This document shows, in pieces, positions 3 through 57,162 of a stretch of DNA of 64,000 nucleotides (positions within the stretch are counted from its first letter, which is position 1; every line of letters starts with the position of its first letter). Origin of the DNA: Octopus sinensis (Eukaryota); contig NC_043001.1 in assembly GCF_006345805.1 (NCBI RefSeq), forward strand, positions 28,892,001 to 28,956,000. The letters are read 5' to 3'. The notes under the pieces are model-generated. The model saw only the letters and a list, made by a program, of their open reading frames with translations, was not told the origin of the DNA and made no database searches. The translations under genes and the position numbers were made by a program.

Positions 3-785
3 TCGATCTGTAGAAAAGGTGTAGGTAGAAACTCTATAAGATGCACCAAGTGTAAGCTATGGACACATAAGAGGTGCAGCAATGTCAAAGGAAGGCTAAC
101 TAGGAAGATGGTTTTTGTATGTGGCAGATGCTCAGGAACAATTAACACTGAAGATGCTCTGAGACCAACTTCCGTCACTTTCCAGGGAGAAAAGCTAGAA
201 GTAGTTGATAGTTTCCGTTACCTAGGTGACCAAGTCAGTAGCGGGGGCGGGTGCGCTGAGAGTATAACTGCTAGAGTAAGAATAGCCTGGGCAAAGTTTA
301 GAGAGCTCTTACCTCTGCTGGTGACAAAAGGCCTCTCGCTCAAAGTAAAAGGCAGACTGTATGATGCATGTGTACGTACAGCCATGCTACATGGTAGTGA
401 AACTTGGGCTGTGACTGCTGAGGATTTGCGTAAGCTCGCAAGAAATGAAGCTAGTATGCTCCGATGGATGTGTAACGTCAGTGTTCATAATCGACAGAGT
501 GTAAGTACCTTGAGAGAAAAGTTGAACCTAAGAAGTATCAGTTGTTGTGTGCAAGAGAGACGTATGCGCTGGTATGGTCATGTGATGAGAATGGCTGAAG
601 ATAGTTGTGTGCGAAAGTGCCACACCCTGGCAGTTGAGGGGACCTGTGGAAGAGGTAGACCCAGGAAAACCTGGGTCGAGGCGGTGAAGCACGACCTTCG
701 AACTTTAGGTCTCACCAAGGAAATGACCAGTGACCGAGACCTTTGGAGGTATGCTGTGCGTGAGAAAACCCGGCAAGACCAGTGA
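3..785 (+). CDS. Partial RTE ORF (PHD-type finger plus RT C-terminal region), 5' incomplete
   Basis: Frame is open from base 3 (SICRKGVGRNSIRCTKCKLWTHKRC...) through ORF 108..785 to TGA 783-785 with no stop. Confidence 0.88.
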   Translation, partial: SICRKGVGRNSIRCTKCKLWTHKRCSNVKGRLTRKMVFVCGRCSGTINTEDALRPTSVTFQGEKLEVVDSFRYLGDQVSSGGGCAESITARVRIAWAKFRELLPLLVTKGLSLKVKGRLYDACVRTAMLHGSETWAVTAEDLRKLARNEASMLRWMCNVSVHNRQSVSTLREKLNLRSISCCVQERRMRWYGHVMRMAEDSCVRKCHTLAVEGTCGRGRPRKTWVEAVKHDLRTLGLTKEMTSDRDLWRYAVREKTRQDQ

Positions 786-835
786 GAACAGTCAAAATCA
801 AGATCAAACCAAATTGAGGTCGATCAACATCAGGG

Positions 836-1545
836 CCCCCGTGCAGGTGACACGTAAAAGTACCATCCGTTCGTAGCCGTTCGCCAGCCCTGTCTGGCCC
901 CCGTGTAGGTGGCACGTAAAAGCACCATCCGTTCGTGTTCGTTGCCAGCCTGGCCTGGCCCCCGTGCCGGTGACACGTAAAAGTACCATCCGTTTGTGGC
1001 CGTTTGCCAGCTCTGTCTGGCCCCCGTGCCGGTGACACGTAAAAGCACCATCCGTTCGTGGCCGTTTGCCAGCTCTGTCTGGCCCCCGTGCCGGTGACAC
1101 GTAAAAGCACCATCCGTTCGTGGCCGTTTGCCAGCCCTGTCTGGCCCCCATGTCGGTGACATGTAAAAGCACCATCCGTTCGTGTCCGTTGCCAGCCTCG
1201 CCTGGCCCCCGTGCCGGTGACATGTAAAAGCACCATCCGTTCGTGGCCGTTTGCCAGCCCTGTCTGGCCCCCATGTCGGTGGCATGTAAAAGCACCATCC
1301 GTTCGTGCCCGTTGCCAGCCACGCCTGGCCCCCATGCCGGTGACACGTAAAAGCACCATCCGTTTCGTGGCCGTTTGCCAGCTGTCTGGCCCCCGTGTTG
1401 GTGGCACGTAAAAGCACCATCCGTTCGTGTCCGTTGCCAGCCTCGCCTGGCCCCGTGCCGGTGACACGTAAAAGCACCATCCGTTCGTGGCCGTTTGCCA
1501 GCTCTGTCTGGCACCTGTGCAGGTGGCACGTAAAAAGCACCCACT
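836..1545 (+). repeat. Tandem array, 11 full 61-62 bp modules plus terminal core, in the RTE 3' UTR
   Basis: Core gtgNNggtgRcacgtaaaagcacc at about 841, 903, 964, 1026, 1088, 1150, 1211, 1273, 1334, 1395, 1455, 1517; two variants (A gccgtttgccagctctgtctgg, B tccgttgccagcctcgcctgg). Confidence 0.97.
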
Positions 1546-1710
1546 ACACTCAGGGAGTGGTTGGCGTTAGGAAGGGCATCCAGCCGTAGAAACACTGCCA
1601 GATCTGACTGGGCCTGATGAAGCCTTCCAGCTTCACAGACCCCAGTTGAACCGTCCAACCCATGCTAGCATGGAGAACGGACGCTAAATGATGATGATGA
1701 TGATGATGAT

Positions 1711-1877
1711 ATATACGACGGACTTCTTTCAGTTACCGTCTACCAAATCCACTCACAAGGCATTGGTCGGCCTGAGGCTATAGTAGAAGACACTTGCCCA
1801 AAGTGCCACGCAGTGGTATTGAACCTGGAACCATGTGGTTGGTATGCAAGCTACTTACCCACACAGCCACTCCTGCA
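1711..1877 (-). mobile_element. tRNA-derived SINE family A, 5' half
   Basis: Reverse complement of head gagtggctgtgtggtaag...ggttcagtcccactgcgtggcaccttgggcaagtgtc with A-box- and B-box-like motifs. Confidence 0.85.
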
Positions 1878-2149
1878 GCAATGTGGCCACTTATTCATCT
1901 TGTGGAAGATTGCTGAACCAGCAGAGTTTCTTTGAGGGTGATGCTCAATGTTATCAGTACATACACCATGAACAAAGCTAGATTTTTCAGGGTGAATCCC
2001 ACCAACTGACATGAAAACAAGATCAATCGTGCAACGGGGTTTTTTTTTTTTATCTCTGAGCATTCGTCCAAGCAACAGGTTAATGAGTGTCGAGAGACAT
2101 TATTAAGTACATGATTGCACATCAATGAAGCATAAGAAAAATAGGGATT

Positions 2150-2754
2150 AAAATAATGATGATGACGATGGCTGTGATAGTGATGATGGTGGCAGGGTGA
2201 TGATGATGATGAAGTTCGCCCCTAGTGGGTAATAATAAAACAGATGATGATGAAGATTGTGGTGGTAGTTTAGGAGGTGTTTGGTTGTGGAGGTAGCGGT
2301 GATGATGATGATGATGATGGTAGTGGTGGTGGTGATGGTGGTGGTGGTGGTAAGATGGGGTAATAGTGGTGGTGGGGTATGATAGTTGTGGTCGTGGTGG
2401 AGGGGTGTGATAGTGTGAGTAGTTGGGGGTGGTGATGATAGTAATAATAATGATGATAGTGGTGATGGTGGTGGTGGTGGTGGTGGTGTGGTGATGATGA
2501 TGACGACGATGAGGATGATGTTGATGGTAGTGGCAATGGTAGTGGTAGTGGCAGCAGTAGCAGCATCAGCAGCTGTGTTGATGTCATCCATGGCTGGAGT
2601 GGCAATGGTGGTAACGACGATGATGATGACAATGATGACGACGACAATGATGACGACGATGATGACGACGAAGATGATGATGATGATGGTGGTGGTGATG
2701 ATGATGATGACGACGACGATGACAATGATGATGATGATGACGACGACGATGACA

Positions 2755-2797
<43 letters not shown>

Positions 2798-2845
2798 CAA
2801 TGATGATGACGATGATGATGATGAGGAGGTGGATGGTGATGATAG

Positions 2846-2899
<54 letters not shown>

Positions 2900-2957
2900 C
2901 AATGATGATGACGATGATGATGATGAGGAGGTGGATGGTGATGATAGTGATGATGAC

Positions 2958-2998
<41 letters not shown>

Positions 2999-3046
2999 CA
3001 ATGATGATGACGATGATGATGATGAGGAGGTGGATGGTGATGATAG

Positions 3047-3089
<43 letters not shown>

Positions 3090-3120
3090 AGTGATGATGG
3101 TGATGACAATGACAGCAATA
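2150..3120. repeat. (GAT/GGT)n compound microsatellite with ~100-bp higher-order unit
   Basis: gaggaggtggatggtgatgatagt recurs at 2823, 2925, 3024 inside (gat)n. Confidence 0.95.
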
Positions 3121-3566: not shown

Positions 3567-4100
3567 TATCATCATCATCATCATCATCATCGTTTAACGT
3601 CCGTTTTCCGCGCTAGCACGGGTTGGACGGTTTCGACCGGGGTCTGGGGAGCAAGGGACTGCCCCAGGCTCCAGTCTAGTCTGGCAGAGTTTCTACAGCT
3701 GGATGCCCTTCCTAACGCCAACCACTCCGCGAGTGTAGTGGGTGTTTTTTACGTGCCACCTGCACAGGTGCCAGAGGGGTCTGGCATCGGCCACGTTTGG
3801 ATGGTGCTTTTTTTATGTGGGGGGGGTGCAGAAATATAGGGGAGCACCAGTGGGGAGGGGTGGTTCAGAGAAATGGTGACAGGTTCTAGGCAGGTAGAAC
3901 GTAGGATATCAAGAGAGGGGTAATGCATGGCGAAATAGCGTATTGAAGAGGGGGGTTCGAAGAGTAGACACCTATTATGGTGGTGGGAGAAGCGACATCC
4001 GGTATGGATGGAGCAAAAATATAGAGATATCCAGTATTGGTGGTGGGGGTGGGCAGGACGGCTGCACCGCGAATACATGATGGTTGATGAATACACGAGA
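3567..4100 (-). mobile_element. Composite non-autonomous element: RTE 3' tail plus a ~150-bp unit (same family as 56185-57120)
   Basis: (cat)n tail, one array core, then sequence matching 56190-56880 in reverse. Confidence 0.8.
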
Positions 4101-5715: not shown

Positions 5716-5792
5716 ATATAGTAGATACATCTAACACATATTAGACTGGGAAGGCAAAACATTAAAACAGCAATGATAGTAGATGACAACGA

Positions 5793-6777
5793 TTATGATG
5801 ATGATGATGATGATGAAGATGAAGATGATGATGATGATGAAGATGAAGATGATGATGATGATGATGAAGATGATGATGATGATGATGATGAAGATGATGA
5901 TGAGATGATGATGATGAGATGAAGATGATGATGATGAAGATGAGATGATGATGAGATGATGATGATGAAGATGAAGATGATGATGATGAAGATGAAGATG
6001 ATGATGATGATGAAGATGAAGATGATGATGATGATGATGAAGATGAAGATGATGATGATGATGAAGATGAAGATGATGATGATGATGATGATGATGAAGA
6101 TGAAGATGATGATGATGATGATGATGAAGATGAAGATGATGATGATGATGATGAAGATGAAGATGATGATGATGATGATTATGGTACTGATGGTGGTGGC
6201 AACAGTGATGATGATGATGGTGGTGATGATGATAGTGATAATGATGATGATAATGGTGATGCTGATGATAATAGAAATGGTGGTTGCATTGGTGGTGGAG
6301 ATAGTGGTGCTGGTGCTGCTATTGATGATGATGATGATGATGATCATCATCATCATCATGAAGACAATGACAACAACAGCAAAAACAATGATGATAACAA
6401 GGATGATGATGGTGGTGGGGGTGGTTATGCTGCTGCTGCTGCTGCTGCTGATTATGATGTTGATGACAATGAAGATGGTGATGGTAGTGATGGCTGCAGC
6501 ATCAATGATTATAATGACGACAGATATGGTGATGATAATAGTGATGATGATGTTTATGATAATGATGATGATGATGATGATGGTGATGGTGATGGTGGTA
6601 GTCATATGCATACTGTCGATGCTACTGATGATGATGATGATGAGAGAAATGATGTTGGTGGAAGCGCCGGAGAAAGTAGCTTAGTAACAACAACAATGGC
6701 ATCAGCAATGGTGATGATGCTGATAATGATGATGACAATGTCACCAACTATTACAATGACAGCAATGATGCTGGTAG

Positions 6778-6879: not shown

Positions 6880-7062
6880 TCATCATCATCGTTTAACATC
6901 CGTTTTTCCATGCTGGAATGGGTTGGATAGTTTGACCAGAGCTGGAAAGCTGGGGTACTGCACCAGACTCCAGTCTGACTAGGCATGGTTTCTATGGTTG
7001 GATGCCCTTCCTAATGCCAACCACTTTACAGACTGTGCTGGGTACTTTCTATGTGGATTGGC
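6880..7062 (-). mobile_element. 5'-truncated RTE tail copy
   Basis: catcatcatcgtttaacatccgttttt...ggatgcccttcctaatgccaaccac. Confidence 0.85.
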
Positions 7063-7460
7063 ACAGGTGTGGCTGTGTGGTAAGTAGCTTGTTTACCAGC
7101 CACATGGTTCCGGGTTCAGTCCCACTGCGTGGTACCTTGGGCAAGTGTCTTCTACTATAGCCTTGGGCCGACCAAAGCCTTGTGAGTGGATTTGGTAGAC
7201 GGAAAGTGAAAGAAGCCCATTGTATATATGTATATGTATGTGTGTGTGTATGTTTGTGTGTCTGTGTTTGTCCCCCCAACATTGCTTGACAACCAATGGT
7301 GGTGTGTTTATGTCCCCGTAACTTAGCAGTTCGGCAAAAGAGACCTATAGAATAAGTACTAGGCTTATAAAGAATAAGTCCTGGGGTCGATTTGCTCGAC
7401 GAAAGGCAGTGCTCCAGCATGGCCACAGTCAAATGACTGAAACAAGTAAAAGATAAAAGG
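7063..7460 (+). mobile_element. SINE A, full length
   Basis: Head gtggctgtgtggtaagtagc, internal TA/TG repeat, tail gactgaaacaagtaaaaga. Confidence 0.9.
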
Positions 7461-9193: not shown

Positions 9194-9199
9194 TATATA

Positions 9200-10075
9200 C
9201 ATCATCATCATCATCATCATCATTTAGCGTCCGCTTTCCATGCTAGCATGGGTTGGACGGGTCAACTGGGGTCTGTGAAGCTGGAAGGCTTCGTCAGGCC
9301 CAGTCAGATCTGGCAGTGTTTCTACGGCTGGATGCCCTTCCTAACGCCAACCACTCTGCGAGTGTAGTGGGTGTTTTTTACGTGCCACCTGCACAGGTGC
9401 CAGAAAGAGCTGGCGAACGGCCACGAAGGGATGGTGCTTTTACGTGTCACCGGCACGGGTCCAGGCAGAGCTGGCAAACGGCCACGAACGGACGGTGCTT
9501 TTACATGTCACCGGCACGGGGCCAGGCGATGCTGGCAACGGACATGAACGGATGGTGCTTTTACGTGCCACCGACACGGGGCCAGACAGAGCTGGCAAAC
9601 GGCCACGAACGGATGGTGCTTTTACGTGTCACCGGCACGGGGGCCAGCCGAGGCTGGCAATGGACGCGAATGGATGGTGCTTTTACGTGCCACCGACACG
9701 GTTGCCAGACAGAGCTGGCAAACGGCCACGAACGGACGGTGCTTTTACGTGTCACCGGCACGGGGGCCAGCCGAGGCTGGCAACGGACACGAACGGATGG
9801 TGCTTTTACGTGCCACCGACACGGGGCCAGACAGAGCTGGCAAACGGCCACGAACAGACGGTGCTTTTACGTGTCACCGACACGGGGCCAGACAGAGATG
9901 GCAAACGGCCACGAACGGACGGTGCTTTTACGTGTCACCGGCACGGGGCCAGGCGAGGCTGGCAATGAACACGAACGGATGGTGCTTTTACGTGCCACCG
10001 ACACGGGGGCCAGGCAGAGCTGGCAGACGGCCACGAGCGAATGGTGCTTTTACGTATCACCGGCACGGGTGCCAG
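9200..10075 (-). mobile_element. RTE 3' UTR copy with 11 modules plus terminal core
   Basis: (cat)n tail at 9200, then 11 copies of ggtgcttttacRt; near-identical modules to 836-1545. Confidence 0.93.
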
Positions 10076-10077
10076 AA

Positions 10078-10417
10078 GGAAATTGTAGTTGGGATACCTG
10101 TGCTGGTGGCACGTAAAAAGCACCATCCGAACATAGCAGATGCCAGTGACCTTGACTGGCTTCTGTGCTGGTGGCACGTAAAAAGCACCAACCGATCGTG
10201 GCCACTGCCAGCTCCCCCAGCACCTGTGCCGGTGGCACGTAAAAAGCACCCACTACACTCACGGACTGGTTGGCATTAGGAAGGGCATCCAGCTGTAGAA
10301 ACACTGCCAGATCAGACTGGAGACTGGTGCAGCCTCCTGGCTTCCCAGACACTGGTTGAACCGTCCAACCCGTGCTAGCACGGAAAACGGATGTTAAACA
10401 ATGATGATGATGATGAT
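10078..10417 (+). mobile_element. RTE subfamily 2, rest of 3' UTR (3 cores) and (GAT)n tail
   Basis: ggaaattgtagttgggatacctgtgctggtggcacg...aacaatgatgatgat. Confidence 0.85.
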
Positions 10418-18750: not shown

Positions 18751-19107
18751 AGTATAAACACATACATTTATTCTTCTTCTGTAATTCCTAGCTGGCGAAT
18801 GGACAGGGAGGCTGTCCTGCGGGTGCCACTGGATGTCAGACTCTGGTAATAATGTTAATCCATGTTTTCCAATCCATGGTGCTGGCTTCTGAATTTGTTT
18901 TGTCCCATGCACAAATGAATAAATGTTATCTGATAGTACCCATATAGTTTTTTGTCTGGTTTCCCATGTTTCCTGATTCTAGCCGCCTCAGCAGGGAAAC
19001 CACCCTCCTCCTTTTTCAGCTGAGCTTGGGACTAGCCATGGCATAGTTATATCATCTTCATCATCATCATCGTCATCGTCATCGTCGTCATCATCATCAT
19101 CACCACC

Positions 19108-19139
<32 letters not shown>

Positions 19140-19141
<2 letters not shown>

Positions 19142-19615
19142 TCATTATTTAACATCTGTTGTCCATGGGTTGGTCAGTTTGACAAGGGCTGATAAACTGA
19201 AAGGCTGCATCAAACTCCAGTCTGATTTGCCATGGTTTCTATGGTTGGATGCCCTTCCTAACACCAATCGCTCCAAGAGCGTAACGGGTGCTTTCGTTTG
19301 TCATCAGCATGGATGCAAGTTGCATGGCACTAGTATCTGGCATGACTACAATTTCACTTGGCTTGATGGGTCTTCTTCTCAAGCATGGCATATCACCAAG
19401 GGTCTCAGTCATTTGTCATTGCCTCCATGAGACCCAATACTTAAAAGATCCAATACTTTTACATGCCGCCGGTAGGGGTGCTAGTTAAGCAACACTGGTA
19501 TCAGCCACATTGCTTCCATGAGGCCCAATGCTTGAGTGGTGCTTTTTACATGCCATCAGCACAGGTACCAGTTATGGATACCAGCATTGGCCGCAACTAC
19601 AATTTCACTTACATG
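19140..19615 (-). mobile_element. Old RTE tail copy with decayed modules
   Basis: (cat)n tail, ggatgcccttcctaacaccaa, several decayed gtgcttttac cores. Confidence 0.75.
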
Positions 19616-21976: not shown

Positions 21977-22754
21977 TGAGTGGGTGCTGAAAAATTCCTG
22001 GCTTTAGGTTAAAGAAAACACAAGAAGATCAGTTAATTATGATTTTATTCAACACCGAGATCTCTGGAGCTATGCTGTGACTGCAAAGACCCGGGCTGCT
22101 TCTTGCACCAGTTCCGCATAGCCCCTGCCCATTCAAAGTACCTTGGATTTCAGAACAACCCGCTGTGCTTGAGGAGACCTATTGAGTCAAGTACATGAAC
22201 GTCGAAATAAATATCAATGGATTGTGATACCTGTGCCGGTGGCACATAAAAGCACCATCCGAACGTGGCCAATGCCGGCGTCGCCTCGACTGGCTTCTGT
22301 GCCGGTGGCACGTAAAAAGCACCATCTGAGCGTGGCCGATGCCAGCGCCGCCCTGACTGGCTTCCGTGCCGGTGGCATGTTAAAAGCACCAACCAATCGT
22401 GGCCACTGCCAGACTCCCCTGGCACCTGTGCTGGTGGCACGTAAAAAGCACCCACTACACTTGCAGAGTGGTTGGCATTAGGAAGGGTATCCAGCTGTAG
22501 AAACACTGCCAGATCAGACTGGAGCCTGGTGCAGCCTTCTGGCTTCCCAGACCCCGGTCGAACCGTCCAACCTGTGCTAGCGCAGAAAACGGACGTTAAG
22601 CGATGATGATGATGATATTCACCTCTCAGATTCACACACTTATTGCAGTGGTCCTACAGCTTTTCTAAATCTTGTAAAAGAACTTGGATGGTTTAGCCTC
22701 CTACCAGGCCTTTTCTGATACCCTTAAAGCCAGGAATTTTTCAGCATCCTCATG
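21977..22754 (-). mobile_element. Mariner deletion derivative (~230 bp) interrupted by an RTE
   Basis: TIRs gggtgctgaaaaattcctggcttta / taaagccaggaatttttcagcatcc; remnant DHCNKCVNLRGEY|VE*. Confidence 0.75.
22055..22617 (+). mobile_element. RTE subfamily 2 3' end, 4 module cores
   Basis: RDLWSYAVTAKTR, UTR, modules, (gat)n tail. Confidence 0.9.
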
Positions 22755-31149: not shown

Positions 31150-31490
31150 AAATTGTAGTTAAGACACCCATGTTGGTGACACGTAAAAAGCACCATCCGA
31201 ACGTGGCAGATACTAGCGTTGCCTGACTAGCGTCCGTGTCGGTGACACGTAAAAGCACCAACCGATCGTGGCCGTTTGCCAGCCTGCTCTGGCTCCTGTG
31301 CCAGTGGCACGTAAATAACACCCACTACACTCACGGAGTAGTTGGCGTTAGGAAGGATATCCAGCTGTAGAAACACTGCCAAATCAGACTAGAGCCTGGT
31401 GCAGCCTCCATGGCTTACAAGACACTGGTTGAACCGTCCAACACATGCTAGCATGGAAAACAGGTGTTAAATGATGATGATGATGATGAT
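31150..31490 (+). mobile_element. RTE tail copy, 3 cores
   Basis: Modules plus (gat)n tail. Confidence 0.88.
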
Positions 31491-31588: not shown

Positions 31589-32060
31589 ATCATCATCATC
31601 GTTTAACATCTGCTTACCATGCTAGCATGGGTTGGATGATTTGACTGAGGTCTGGTGAACCAGATGGCTGCACCAGGCTCCAATCTGATCTGGCAGATTT
31701 TCTACAGCTGGATGCCCTTCCTAATGCCAACCACTCCAAGAGTGTAGTGGGTACTTTTACGTGCCACCGGCATGAGGGCCAGTCAGGCAGGACTGGCAAT
31801 AGCCATGCTCAAATGGTGCTTTTTATGTGCCACCTGCACAGGAGCCAATCCAGTGGCACTGGCAACGACCTTGCTCGAATGTTTTTTCATGTGCCACCAG
31901 CACAATTGTCAGTAAGGCAATGCAGGTAACGATCACGCTCAAATGGTGCTTTTTACGTGCCATCGACACAGAGGCCAGCTTGTTGCTCTGGCAACGATCA
32001 CGCCCGTATGGTACTCTTAGTACTCCACTAGCATGAATGCCAGTCATCGAATTTGATTTC
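31589..32060 (-). mobile_element. RTE tail copy with decayed modules
   Basis: catcatcatcgtttaac tail; 4-5 ggtgcttttt cores. Confidence 0.85.
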
Positions 32061-35230: not shown

Positions 35231-35504
35231 ACATGAGAACTGTTTGATTTATATAAACAGATATCATCATCATCATCGTCATTATCATCGTCATCATCAT
35301 CGTTGTCATCATCATCATCGTCATCATCATCATCGTCATCATCATCGTCATCGTCATCATCATCATCATCATCGTTGTTGTTGTTGTTCTTGTTCTAACA
35401 TCCAGTATTTCATGCTTGTAAAGGGGTCAAACGGAATTTGTGGACAGCATTATGCTGGACAGGGCTAAATAATTCTTGAATCAGAGTAATAAAATATTAC
35501 AGTC

Positions 35505-37760: not shown

Positions 37761-38127
37761 CCAGCGGTACTCATGAGAAGCACACCATTCGAGCGTGATC
37801 ATTACCGTATCGCCTTACTAGCACTTGTGCTGGTGGCATGTGAAATATTCAAGCGAGGTTGTTGCCAGTGCCGCTGGACTGTCTCCTGTGCAGGTGGCAC
37901 GTAAAAGGCACCATTTGGGCATGGCCGCTGCCAGTACCACCAGACTGGCCCTCGTGCCAGTGGCATGTAAAAGCACCCACTACACTCTCGGAGTGATTGG
38001 CGTTAGGAAGGGCATCCAGCTGTAGAAACTCTGCCAGATCAGACTGGAGTCTGGTTCGCCAGACCTCAGTCAAATTGTCCAACCTATGCCAGCATGGAAA
38101 GTGGATATTAAATGATGATGATGATGA
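37761..38127 (+). mobile_element. RTE tail copy, decayed modules
   Basis: Three cores plus (gat)n. Confidence 0.85.
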
Positions 38128-38139
38128 CATATATATAAG

Positions 38140-38172
<33 letters not shown>

Positions 38173-39355: not shown

Positions 39356-42521
<3,166 letters not shown>

Positions 42522-43189: not shown

Positions 43190-44045
<856 letters not shown>

Positions 44046-56184: not shown

Positions 56185-57116
56185 CGGCGCGCCCGCCCCG
56201 CCCTACCCACCCCCACCACCAATACCGGATATCTCTATTTTGCTCCAACTATACCGGATGTCGTTTCTCCCACCATTATAGGTGTCTACTCTTTGAACCC
56301 CTCTCTTCAATACGCTATTTCACCATGCATTACCCCTCTCTCGATATCCTACGTCCTACCTCCGCCTCCACCCCTCCCACTGGTGCTCCCCTATATTTCT
56401 GCACCCCCCCACCACCATTATAGGTGTCTACTCTTTGAAGCCCCTCTTCAATACGCTATTTCACCATGCATTACCCCTCTCTCGATATCCTACGTTCTAC
56501 TTGCCTAGAACCTGTCCTCTGAACCACCCCTCCCACTGGTGCTCCCCTAATTTCTGCACCCCCCCACCACCATTATAGGTGTCTACTTTTGAACCCCCTC
56601 TTCAATACGCTATTTCACCATGCATTACCCCTCTCTCGATATCCTACGTTCTACTTGCATATTACCTGTCCTCTGAACCACCCCCCACTGGTGCTCCCCT
56701 ATATTTCTGCACCCCCCCACCACCATTATAGGTGTCTACTCTTTGAACCCCCTCTTCAATACGCTATTTCACCATGCATTACCCCTCTCTCGATATCCTA
56801 CGTTCTACTTGCATATTACCTGTCCTCTGAACCACCCCTCCCACTGGTGCTCCCCTATATTTCTGCACCCCCCCCCATAAAAAAAGCACCATCCGAACGG
56901 CCGATGCCAGACCCCTCTGGCACCTGTGCAGGTGGCACGTAAAAAACACCCACTACACTCGCGGAGTGGTTGGCGTTAGGAAGGGCATCCAGCTGTAGAA
57001 ACACTGCCAGACTAGACTGGAGCCTGGGGCAGTCCCGAGCTCTCCAGACCCCGGTCGAAACCGTCCAACCCGTGCTAGCGCGGAAAACGGACGTTAAACG
57101 ATGATGATGATGATGA

Positions 57117-57120
<4 letters not shown>
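56185..57120 (+). mobile_element. Composite element: GC-rich head, 4 x ~150-bp units, RTE 3' tail
   Basis: Units start 56271, 56413, 56568, 56721; RTE core and (gat)n tail 56880-57120. Confidence 0.85.

Positions 57121-57159
<39 letters not shown>

Positions 57160-57162
<3 letters not shown>

What the first reader, a model, noticed from the sequence alone, without database searches (positions are those of the whole stretch)
836..1545. RTE 3' UTR is an array of ~61-nt modules, each fitting a compact H-type pseudoknot plus a hairpin
Seen: every module has YGTG-NN-GGTG-R-CACG-TAAAA(A)G-CACC. This reads as S1 YGTG/CACG, a 2-nt loop, S2 GGTG/CACC, a 1-nt loop and an A-rich loop. Variation concentrates in the predicted loops (NN = CC, CA, TA, TC, TT, CT, CG; R = A/G). 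Units at 1149-1163 and 1272-1286 have CATG/CATG in S1. Each module then has a GCCAG/CTGGC stem with a variable loop. A downstream CGTG, conserved behind a variable 7-nt linker, could pair with CACG as an alternative. Established: A-rich loops crossing S1 are typical of H-type pseudoknots, and LINE RTs recognise 3' structures. Inference: a multimerised RNA module (RT or RNP loading, exonuclease block, or an unknown ribozyme) kept across all RTE subfamilies here. Caveat: the CATG/CATG change can arise from CpG decay alone.
Basis: partly seen in the sequence, partly recalled or inferred. Interest (0 to 1): 0.85.

Follow-up and report, generated by a model that had tools for sequence, protein, structure and literature searches.

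The report
Tandem repeat in octopus RTE tail
This is a 12-unit minisatellite in the 3' untranslated region of an octopus RTE-type jumping gene; each unit carries a short conserved core that could fold as a small RNA pseudoknot, but nothing tested here shows that it does.

Summary
Window 834-1541 holds 11 full units of 60-62 nt plus a terminal half unit. They are organised as 123-nt A/B dimers. The array lies between the stop codon of an Octopus vulgaris-type RTE ORF (783-785) and a 148-nt conserved tail followed by (GAT)n.

All 12 units carry YGTG-NN-GGTG-R-CAYG-TAAAA(A)G-YACC, and all 11 full units carry GCCAG-loop-CTGGC. Related insertions here and in two outside contigs carry 1.5-5 units just upstream of the tail. 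Between subfamilies the four tetramers and the hairpin arms stay 82-95% identical, while the positions between them are only 32-66% identical. The core therefore looks constrained.

The pseudoknot itself is not supported:
- S2 shows no compensatory change.
- S1 changes on both sides only at its two CpG-bearing pairs.
- A rough energy estimate puts the knot at -0.6 to -2.9 kcal/mol, against -5 to -10 for nested folds.
- Two other pairing schemes use the same tetramers: an extended hairpin and an inter-unit helix.
- Rfam finds nothing.

Petrosino et al. 2022 already noted a repeat-filled RTE-2_OV 3' UTR.

My best reading is a conserved 3'-UTR cis element, probably an RNA recognition site, amplified as a minisatellite in one lineage. 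Interest is modest.

The parts
3..785 (+). 3' end of the RTE-type LINE ORF: RT C-terminal region with a PHD-like zinc finger. Stop codon TGA at 783-785. The ORF runs off the window start.
   Evidence: Hits are about 70% identical to Octopus bimaculoides proteins. A copy about 90% identical at the DNA level lies in O. vulgaris GCA_951406725.2.
786..833 (+). Short unique 3'-UTR leader between the stop codon and the array. The sister subfamily in L001/L124 has a leader about 110 nt longer.
834..1509 (+). Eleven full modules of 60-62 nt, starting at 834, 896, 957, 1019, 1081, 1143, 1204, 1266, 1327, 1388 and 1448. A-type (NN=CC, R=A) and B-type (NN=TC/TA/TT, R=G) modules alternate over part of the array.
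1025..1049 (+). Example core (module 4): CGTG CC GGTG A CACG TAAAAG CACC. These are the four pairwise-complementary tetramers read as S1/S2.
1068..1083 (+). Example hairpin (module 4): GCCAG CTCTGT CTGGC. The arms are conserved and the loop is hypervariable (4-11 nt) between subfamilies.
   Evidence: It is the only helix that recurs in every module of the whole-UTR MFE.
1510..1541 (+). Terminal half module (GGCACC TGTG CA GGTG G CACG TAAAAAG CACC). It abuts the tail and is present in every RTE-type tail copy that is not truncated further 3'.
1541..1688 (+). Conserved 148-nt 3' tail. It includes the stem-loop CACTC-NNN-GAGTG and the block GGTTGGCGTTAGGAAGGGCATCCAGC.
   Evidence: 18 tail copies in the window; consensus fold; the block is also found in unrelated metagenome contigs.
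1689..1710 (+). (ATG/GAT)7 terminal microsatellite, the 3' end of the element.
9370..10073 (-). Second array of the same young subfamily: 11 full modules plus the terminal one, 5'-truncated, with no ORF. The A/B order differs from array 1.
39474..39744 (+). Sister-subfamily 3' UTR with about 5 modules. Further copies with 1.5-5 modules lie at 3741-3811(-), 10096-10250(+), 22228-22452(+), 31164-31315(+), 31750-32019(-), 37783-37977(+), 43400-43462(+) and 56882-56950(+).

Best explanation
**What it is (shown).** The block is a minisatellite inside the 3' UTR of a young Octopus vulgaris-type RTE-clade LINE. Its unit is an amplified copy of an older 3'-UTR segment. All related RTE subfamilies and their non-autonomous derivatives carry that segment 1.5-5 times, directly upstream of the conserved 3' tail.

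The unit holds two blocks that stay constant between subfamilies while the positions between them drift:
- a 25-26-nt core, YGUG NN GGUG R CAYG UAAAA(A)R CACC;
- a 5-bp GCCAG/CUGGC hairpin with a hypervariable loop.

**How it works (inferred).** These blocks are cis-acting elements of the LINE transcript. With the adjoining tail they help the element's own protein find its RNA for RNP formation or target-primed reverse transcription, as in LINEs with 'stringent' 3' recognition.

**The 12-fold array (inferred).** It is a lineage-specific expansion in A/B dimer steps by slippage, unequal exchange or RT template switching. It is tolerated and not required.

**The fold.** It is not settled. The hairpin and a CGUG/CACG stem are the better-supported parts. 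The H-type pseudoknot is one of at least three mutually exclusive ways of pairing the same four tetramers.
For: **Position.** The array lies between the ORF stop and the tail plus (GAT)n.

**Repeat structure.** Tandem organisation with a 123-nt higher-order unit.

**Distribution.**
- About 55 modules in 12 insertions in the window.
- 4.5 modules in L001, and 4.5 in the RTE of L124 plus three further insertions there.
- A non-autonomous family with a 154-nt internal repeat keeps exactly 1.5 modules plus the tail, at 3741 and at 56950.

**Between-subfamily column identity.**
- Conserved: S1a 0.82, S2a 0.95, S1b 0.85, S2b 0.83, hairpin arms 0.76-0.86.
- Drifting: NN 0.48, R 0.56, linker 0.60, hairpin loop 0.32.

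**Indels.** There are none in columns 7-21 of 70 modules, while the A-rich stretch varies from 6 to 8 nt.

**Strand.** U.G at pair 7-21 in 16 modules fits the sense RNA strand only.

**Literature.** The RTE-2_OV 3' UTR is reported as about 600 nt made up mostly of a 'microsatellite' (PMC9115989).
Against: - No binding or retrotransposition data exist.
- Conservation alone cannot separate an RNA-level from a DNA-level constraint.
- The nested fold of single modules, dimers and the whole UTR is no more stable than shuffles (z +0.3 to +0.9).
- Nearly all stem positions are invariant, so covariation cannot confirm any helix.
- The sampled copies are mostly dead and decaying, and they share ancestry.
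- Module number ranges from 1.5 to 12, so multiplicity has no demonstrated role.
Confidence: 0.5

Rival explanations
1. Each core folds as a compact H-type pseudoknot: S1 CGUG/CACG, L1 2 nt, S2 GGUG/CACC, a 1-nt junction and an A-rich L3 of 6-8 nt. It is followed by the GCCAG hairpin. The array is a multivalent structured RNA platform.
For: - The pattern fits in 92.6-95.9% of cells.
- Loop lengths are sterically allowed. L1 and the junction never change length, while L3 does.
- Only 0.1-0.5% of shuffled 25-mers allow such a knot.
- All four conserved tetramers are explained at once.
- S1 pair states are associated beyond column shuffles (0 of 500 shuffles; Fisher p = 0.001 and 0.006).
Against: - S2 has 0 compensatory changes, 23 unpaired cells and 5 G.U.
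- All S1 double changes sit at the two CpG-bearing pairs. The association weakens to p about 0.05-0.06 without the two young arrays. By hand count, roughly 9-10 compensating against 4 non-compensating independent events remain (binomial p about 0.09-0.13 for those counts).
- Single transitions show no wobble-over-mismatch bias: 12 against 7.
- The rough knot energy is -0.6 to -2.9 kcal/mol, against -4.9 to -7.3 for the extended hairpin and -7.8 to -10.1 for the MFE.
- About 9% of shuffled units hold some such knot.
- In the more distant RTE on L002 the similar-looking words form nested hairpins (8 bp, 5 bp and 14 bp; z = -3.7) and not a knot. That homology was judged by eye.
Confidence: 0.2
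2. A neutral minisatellite. The unit has no function of its own. Similarity reflects recent amplification and common descent, and the uneven conservation reflects mutational heterogeneity (CpG sites, slippage-prone C-rich loops).
For: - Copy number varies from 1.5 to 12.
- The arrays show A/B higher-order structure and no positional orthology between the two 12-unit arrays.
- Folding is not better than shuffles.
- All double changes are CpG-type.
Against: Between diverged subfamilies, indel-free neighbouring columns differ two-fold in identity: 0.48-0.56 against 0.82-0.95. Equal neutral decay does not predict this. At least the terminal core plus hairpin is retained in every RTE-type copy and in a non-autonomous family.
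Confidence: 0.22
3. The tetramers pair between neighbouring units, not within one. The 3' arm GRCACG of unit i pairs with the 5' arm CGUGNN of unit i+1. This makes a chain of long stem-loops, each enclosing the A-rich stretch, CACC, the linker and the GCCAG hairpin. A variant is a plain extended hairpin YGUGNN-GGU-GRCAYG with a conserved apical GGU(G) loop.
For: - R17(i)-N11(i+1) is Watson-Crick in 31 of 41 junctions, against 18 of 41 for the within-unit pair 11-17.
- The A/B dimer carries G>A in A and C>U in the next B, a non-CpG compensatory pair in this frame.
- The extended hairpin is the most stable local helix.
- L002 has an 8-bp version that pairs the NN positions.
Against: - The A/B signal is essentially one evolutionary event copied by dimer amplification, so the phase is close to a coin-flip.
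- These folds leave the conservation of GGUG and CACC unexplained.
- A-type units have a C.A mismatch in the within-unit extension.
Confidence: 0.12
4. A DNA-level element. The units are tandem binding sites for a host factor, or an internal or antisense promoter. For example, the minus strand reads TACGTG, an ACGTG-core site of the bHLH-PAS type.
For: Only the conserved sequence blocks themselves and the ACGT core seen directly in the sequence.
Against: - No motif library was available, so this was not tested.
- The U.G states at pair 7-21 and the strand-specific A-rich run are more natural for RNA.
- No promoter evidence was sought or found.
Confidence: 0.05

Closest known systems
3'-UTR recognition elements of 'stringent' LINEs and their partner SINEs (eel UnaL2/UnaSINE1, zebrafish ZfL2, R2, SART1/R1Bm). 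This comparison rests on my own knowledge of Kajikawa & Okada 2002 and related work.
   Same: A conserved short structured segment lies next to a terminal microsatellite at the 3' end. It is shared between the autonomous element and non-autonomous elements that it presumably mobilises.
   Different: Here the candidate element is repeated 1.5-12 times upstream of a further 148-nt tail. No binding or retrotransposition test exists for this RTE, and the fold is unresolved.
Repeat-filled 3' UTR of octopus RTE-2_OV, and microsatellite generation by RTE elements (Petrosino et al. 2022, PMC9115989; Tay et al. 2010, PMC2887409)
   Same: Same host genus and LINE clade. The 3' UTR is described as about 600 nt, mostly a 'microsatellite' that blocked PCR.
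   Different: The papers do not describe the roughly 61-nt unit, its conserved core and hairpin, the A/B dimer order or its spread over subfamilies. Identity of this copy with RTE-2_OV was not tested.
Internal tandem arrays of retrotransposons (SVA VNTR, mouse L1 5' monomers, Drosophila HeT-A/TART 3' repeats). From my own knowledge.
   Same: Head-to-tail units of tens to hundreds of nt inside a non-coding part of the element. Copy number varies between subfamilies.
   Different: Different sequences and positions. Mouse L1 monomers are promoters. No role is known for the units here.
Compact H-type pseudoknots with an A-rich L3 (luteovirid frameshift knots such as BWYV; preQ1-I riboswitch). From my own knowledge.
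   Same: Architecture on paper: stems of 3-5 bp, L1 of 1-3 nt, a junction of 0-1 nt, and an A-rich L3 of 6-8 nt able to lie in the S1 minor groove.
   Different: No sequence or covariance-model match, and no covariation for S2. The context is wrong for frameshifting or read-through: the first core starts 55 nt after the stop codon. There is no ligand or ribosome context.
HDV-like self-cleaving ribozymes of RTE and R2 elements (Ruminski et al. 2011, as cited in PMC5786205)
   Same: A structured RNA with nested double-pseudoknot topology in RTE-clade transcripts.
   Different: Those ribozymes sit at the 5' end and have a defined, larger fold. Rfam models find nothing here even at E <= 10.

Membership tests
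TE-internal minisatellite / VNTR | Head-to-tail units with a regular period | tested here: met
   Period 62, 11.5 copies; 123-nt higher-order unit with 91% matches; checkerboard identity matrix.
TE-internal minisatellite / VNTR | Copy number differs between copies and subfamilies of the element | tested here: met
   12, 12(+), 5, 5, 4.5, 4, 4, 3, 3 and 1.5 modules in different insertions.
LINE 3'-UTR cis recognition element (stringent type) | Lies in the 3' UTR next to the 3' terminal repeat of an autonomous LINE | tested here: met
   ORF stop at 785, array 834-1541, tail 1541-1688, (GAT)n 1689-1710.
LINE 3'-UTR cis recognition element (stringent type) | Shared with non-autonomous elements | tested here: met
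   The 154-nt-repeat family (3741, 56950) and short ORF-less copies carry at least 1.5 modules plus the tail. Whether the short copies are a true non-autonomous family or 5' truncations is not resolved.
LINE 3'-UTR cis recognition element (stringent type) | Conserved between diverged subfamilies relative to flanking UTR | tested here: met
   Tetramers and hairpin arms at 0.76-0.95 identity, spacers at 0.32-0.66.
LINE 3'-UTR cis recognition element (stringent type) | Required for binding by the element's protein and for retrotransposition | not testable with these tools
   Needs binding and retrotransposition assays.
H-type RNA pseudoknot | Two helices in crossing order with sterically allowed loops | tested here: met
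   4+4 bp, L1 2 nt, junction 1 nt, L3 6-8 nt; 92.6-95.9% of cells pair.
H-type RNA pseudoknot | Both helices supported by compensatory changes | tested here: not met
   S2 has 0 both-side changes in 70 modules. S1 has them only at the two CpG-bearing pairs.
H-type RNA pseudoknot | Competitive stability against nested alternatives | tested here: inconclusive
   The rough estimate with a generic penalty gives -0.6 to -2.9 kcal/mol, against -4.9 to -10.1 for nested folds. No pseudoknot-aware program was available, and tertiary contacts are not modelled.
H-type RNA pseudoknot | Chemical or enzymatic probing, or a solved structure | not testable with these tools
   None available.
Known RNA families (ribozymes, xrRNA, riboswitch or frameshift knots) in Rfam 15 | Covariance-model match | tested here: not met
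   0 matches at gathering score in the window. At E <= 10 on 780-1720 there were only four chance-level hits, E 1.9-6.4.
RTE clade of non-LTR retrotransposons | RT phylogeny placing the ORF in the RTE clade | not tested
   Only indirect evidence: an RVT_1 domain on the related P0069 plus a PHD-like finger, the trinucleotide-repeat 3' end, and literature on O. vulgaris RTE families with repeat-rich 3' UTRs.

The most novel reading that the evidence does not exclude
The core is a genuine miniature H-type pseudoknot, or a switch between the knot and the extended or inter-unit helices. Together with the GCCAG hairpin it forms a new class of LINE 3'-UTR protein-binding module. Its tandem amplification gives one octopus RTE lineage a multivalent RNP-loading platform.
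Probability: 0.15. Interest if true: 0.6.

Novelty: new member of a known kind. Interest (0 to 1): 0.3.

Why it matters
RTE elements are among the LINEs reported as expressed, and possibly active, in the octopus brain. How RTE-clade reverse transcriptases pick their template is, as far as I know, largely untested. A short conserved core plus hairpin, found beside the tail in all subfamilies sampled here, is a concrete candidate for that recognition signal. It also gives a handle for classifying the many ORF-less relatives. The 12-unit array explains why this 3' UTR resists PCR and short-read assembly. If the pseudoknot were real it would be a new small RNA motif, but on present evidence this is an ordinary TE minisatellite built from a conserved UTR segment.

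Tried and rejected
- **Rfam.** The scan of the whole window at gathering score gave nothing. The scan of 780-1720 at E <= 10 gave only chance-level hits. Ribozyme, xrRNA and known-knot readings are dropped.
- **Metagenome scans.** A 27-nt tail pattern gave 0 hits. A 16-nt tail pattern gave 120+ loci. None of them carried modules, and 32 shared only a 22-41-nt tail block. This says nothing about the module but shows the tail block is widespread.
- **Look-ups of close RT relatives.**
  - P0046/L123 has an unrelated 3' flank.
  - L002 has no array.
  - L001 and L124 were useful.
- **Nested folding.** Units, dimers, the whole UTR and an RNAalifold run on terminal module plus tail gave no consistent or unusually stable fold. 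The covariation term was -0.9 kcal/mol.
- **Upstream CACC pairing with GGTG (E-box-like palindrome).** Only 64% of cells pair. Rejected as a general feature.
- **Read-through or frameshift stimulator.** Rejected: the first core is 55 nt past the stop, and each unit has in-frame stops on the + strand.
- **Minus-strand ORFs through the array.** No Pfam match. They are a by-product of a stop-free repeat unit.
- **Other checks.** ARAGORN found no tRNA genes. Full-text search for the core and tail sequences found no paper.

Full report
**What is there**

Window 834-1541 is a tandem array with period 62, 11.5 copies and 86% matches. It fits better as a 123-nt dimer, at 91% matches.

- An ORF on the + strand runs off the window start and stops at 783-785. 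It encodes an RT C-terminal region with a PHD-like finger.
- Its closest named relatives are Octopus bimaculoides proteins at about 70% identity.
- A copy about 90% identical at the DNA level lies in the O. vulgaris assembly GCA_951406725.2.
- The array starts 48 nt after the stop.
- Its twelfth unit (1510-1541) is only the core. It abuts a 148-nt tail (1541-1688) followed by (ATG/GAT)7 at 1689-1710.

I did not test RTE clade membership phylogenetically. It rests on the trinucleotide-repeat end and on papers about O. vulgaris RTE families. Petrosino et al. [quoted passage not shown] The existence of such a repeat has thus been noted, though not analysed.

**Checking the observation**

The degenerate core pattern occurs 41 times in the window, against 0 in 100 shuffles.

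- All 12 units of this array carry the core.
- Eleven of the 12 keep all eight proposed pairs as Watson-Crick or G.U. Unit 1333 has an A.C mismatch.
- CATG/CATG at 1149 and 1272 is correct.
- All 11 full units carry GCCAG-loop-CTGGC.

Small corrections apply. NN = CT and CG come from other arrays. The 7-nt linker is nearly invariant within this array. The A-rich loop is as conserved as the stems.

**How widespread it is**

- An HMM of the unit finds about 55 modules in 12 insertions in the 64 kb, and the tail occurs 18 times.
- A second array of the same young subfamily lies at 9370-10073(-). It has 11 full units plus the terminal one but is 5'-truncated and has a different A/B order. There is no unit-by-unit orthology between the two arrays.
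- Other insertions carry 3-5 units.
- A non-autonomous family with a 154-nt internal repeat carries exactly 1.5 units plus the tail, at two sites.
- Outside the window, an ENA contig with an 87%-identical RT end (L001) and an O. vulgaris RTE in L124 each have 4.5 units behind a longer UTR leader.

Twelve units is therefore a lineage-specific expansion of a segment that is normally present a few times.

**Is the unit constrained?**

I compared modules from eight different insertion groups column by column.

| Segment | Identity between subfamilies |
|---|---|
| S1a / S2a / S1b / S2b tetramers | 0.82 / 0.95 / 0.85 / 0.83 |
| Hairpin arms | about 0.76-0.86 |
| NN | 0.48 |
| R | 0.56 |
| Linker | 0.60 |
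| Hairpin loop | 0.32 |

Columns 7-21 never gain or lose a base in 70 modules, while the A-rich run varies from 6 to 8 nt. Neutral decay of dead copies should hit neighbouring non-CpG columns equally. The contrast therefore points to selection in the active lineages. I put this at roughly 0.75, lowered because of shared ancestry and small samples.

**Is it a pseudoknot?**

*In favour*
- The four conserved tetramers are pairwise complementary in crossing order.
- The loop lengths are sterically fine.
- Only 0.1-0.5% of shuffled 25-mers allow such a knot.

*Against, or neutral*
- About 9% of shuffled 62-nt units contain some 4+4 knot, which is the fairer figure for a reading made after the fact.
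- On 50 and then 70 modules, S2 has no compensatory change at all: 23 unpaired cells and 5 G.U.
- S1 has both-side changes only at pairs 7-21 (CG>UA) and 8-20 (GC>AU), both built from CpG dinucleotides.
- Those S1 states are associated beyond column shuffles (0 of 500 shuffles; Fisher p = 0.001 and 0.006). The association falls to p about 0.05-0.06 once the two young arrays are removed.
- Collapsing by hand to independent events leaves about 9-10 compensating against 4 non-compensating changes (binomial p about 0.09-0.13 for those counts). Older copies have decayed at both sites, which alone produces such an association.
- Single transitions show no clear preference for wobble over A.C: 12 against 7.
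- A rough estimate (stacking plus a generic pseudoknot penalty) gives -0.6 to -2.9 kcal/mol for the knot. The extended hairpin gives -4.9 to -7.3 and the local MFE -7.8 to -10.1.
- Nested folding of units, dimers and the whole UTR is no better than shuffles (z +0.3 to +0.9). This fits either little structure or structure that nested models cannot see.

**Competing pairings**

The same words allow other folds.

- *Extended hairpin.* YGUGNN-GGU-GRCAYG pairs in 90% of cells, but A-type units have a C.A mismatch.
- *Inter-unit helix.* The A/B dimer carries A17 in A-type units and U11 in B-type units. The arm GRCACG of unit i is then perfectly complementary to CGUGNN of unit i+1. R17(i)-N11(i+1) is Watson-Crick in 31 of 41 junctions, against 18 of 41 for the within-unit pair. 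This is the only non-CpG compensatory signal in the data. It is essentially one event copied by dimer amplification.
- *A more distant relative.* In the RTE on L002 (70% amino-acid identity, no array) the similar-looking words TGTGTCGGTG...CACATTAAAATAACC sit in an 8-bp nested hairpin that pairs the 'NN' bases. A second A-rich+CACC stretch pairs with a downstream GGUG in a 14-bp hairpin. That UTR folds far better than shuffles (z = -3.7). GGUG/CACC complementarity may therefore be an old theme, but with nested topology. The homology was judged by eye.

**The hairpin**

GCCAG/CUGGC with a 4-11-nt loop is the most regular helix and the only one present in every unit of the whole-UTR MFE. It has one double change (ACUAG/CUAGC at 31163) and one wobble, which is too little to prove it.

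**Known families**

Rfam 15 gives no match at gathering scores. At E <= 10 on 780-1720 it gives only four chance-level hits. The first core begins 55 nt after the stop codon and each unit has + strand stops, so a read-through or frameshift role is out.

**Verdict**

This is a conserved, multimerised 3'-UTR module of an RTE LINE. The pseudoknot is an unproven reading and one of several, and none of the proposed functions has been tested.
- The most likely account is a cis-acting RNA recognition segment (hairpin plus core, working with the tail) amplified as a minisatellite in one young subfamily.
- It is a new member of a known kind: LINE 3'-UTR elements and TE-internal tandem arrays. Interest is modest.

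Noticed in passing
window 1689-1725, 9195-9222, 38100-38150, 39890-39930, 43609-43640, 57099-57160; L001 1391-1412: The (GAT)n 3' ends of most tail copies run straight into (TA)n or AT-rich microsatellite. Either the RTE endonuclease prefers (TA)n targets, or the element itself ends in (GAT)n(TA)n.
   Followed up: partly
window 1558-1593; L068 3852-3885, L034 3678-3711, L007 1014-1052, L047 531-567, L105 1412-1445 and about 25 more loci: The tail block GGTTGG(C/G)RTTAGGAAGGGCATCCAGC is 88-100% conserved in many non-octopus metagenome contigs with otherwise unrelated flanks. It looks like one of the deeply conserved SINE/RTE body domains. I could not assign it to a named domain.
   Followed up: partly
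window 56368-56874 (+) and 3812-4100 (-): A 154-nt tandem repeat (3.3 copies, 96% matches at 56368-56874) is joined to 1.5 modules plus the RTE tail at two sites. This looks like a non-autonomous element with its own, different internal array.
   Followed up: partly
window 9204-9400 versus 10220-10417: The 5'-truncated 12-unit copy (-) and a 3-unit copy (+) lie head to head. They form inverted repeats of 101 nt (92% complementary) and 94 nt (81%), which would give long double-stranded RNA in any read-through transcript.
   Followed up: partly
window 1551-1563; 19263-19275 (-): The tail stem-loop CACTC-NNN-GAGTG has a variable triloop. In the divergent copy at 19287 it shows a non-CpG compensatory change to CGCTC/GAGCG. 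This is better covariation than anything found in the modules.
   Followed up: partly
window 712-1658 (-) and 9253-10279 (+): The strand opposite the array is free of stop codons in all three frames, giving ORFs of 236-287 aa. There is no Pfam match. Most likely this is a by-product of the repeat unit.
   Followed up: yes
window 1711-1880 (-) and 7049-7250: Another abundant repeat, with a tRNA-like box-B motif seen by eye, lies tail to tail with the RTE copy and recurs elsewhere. ARAGORN calls no tRNA.
   Followed up: partly
window 2619-3106, 5791-6269, 19051-19145, 35263-35373: There are long (GAT)n/(ATC)n arrays of up to about 490 bp, the same trinucleotide as the RTE 3' end. They may be expanded RTE tails, as described for Lepidoptera by Tay et al. 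2010.
   Followed up: no
window 19287-19568 (-): A divergent relative has units of about 125 nt that start with GTGAAATTGTAGT and hold degenerate cores. The same GAAATTGTAG word marks the 5' end of several short copies (10090, 31150).
   Followed up: no
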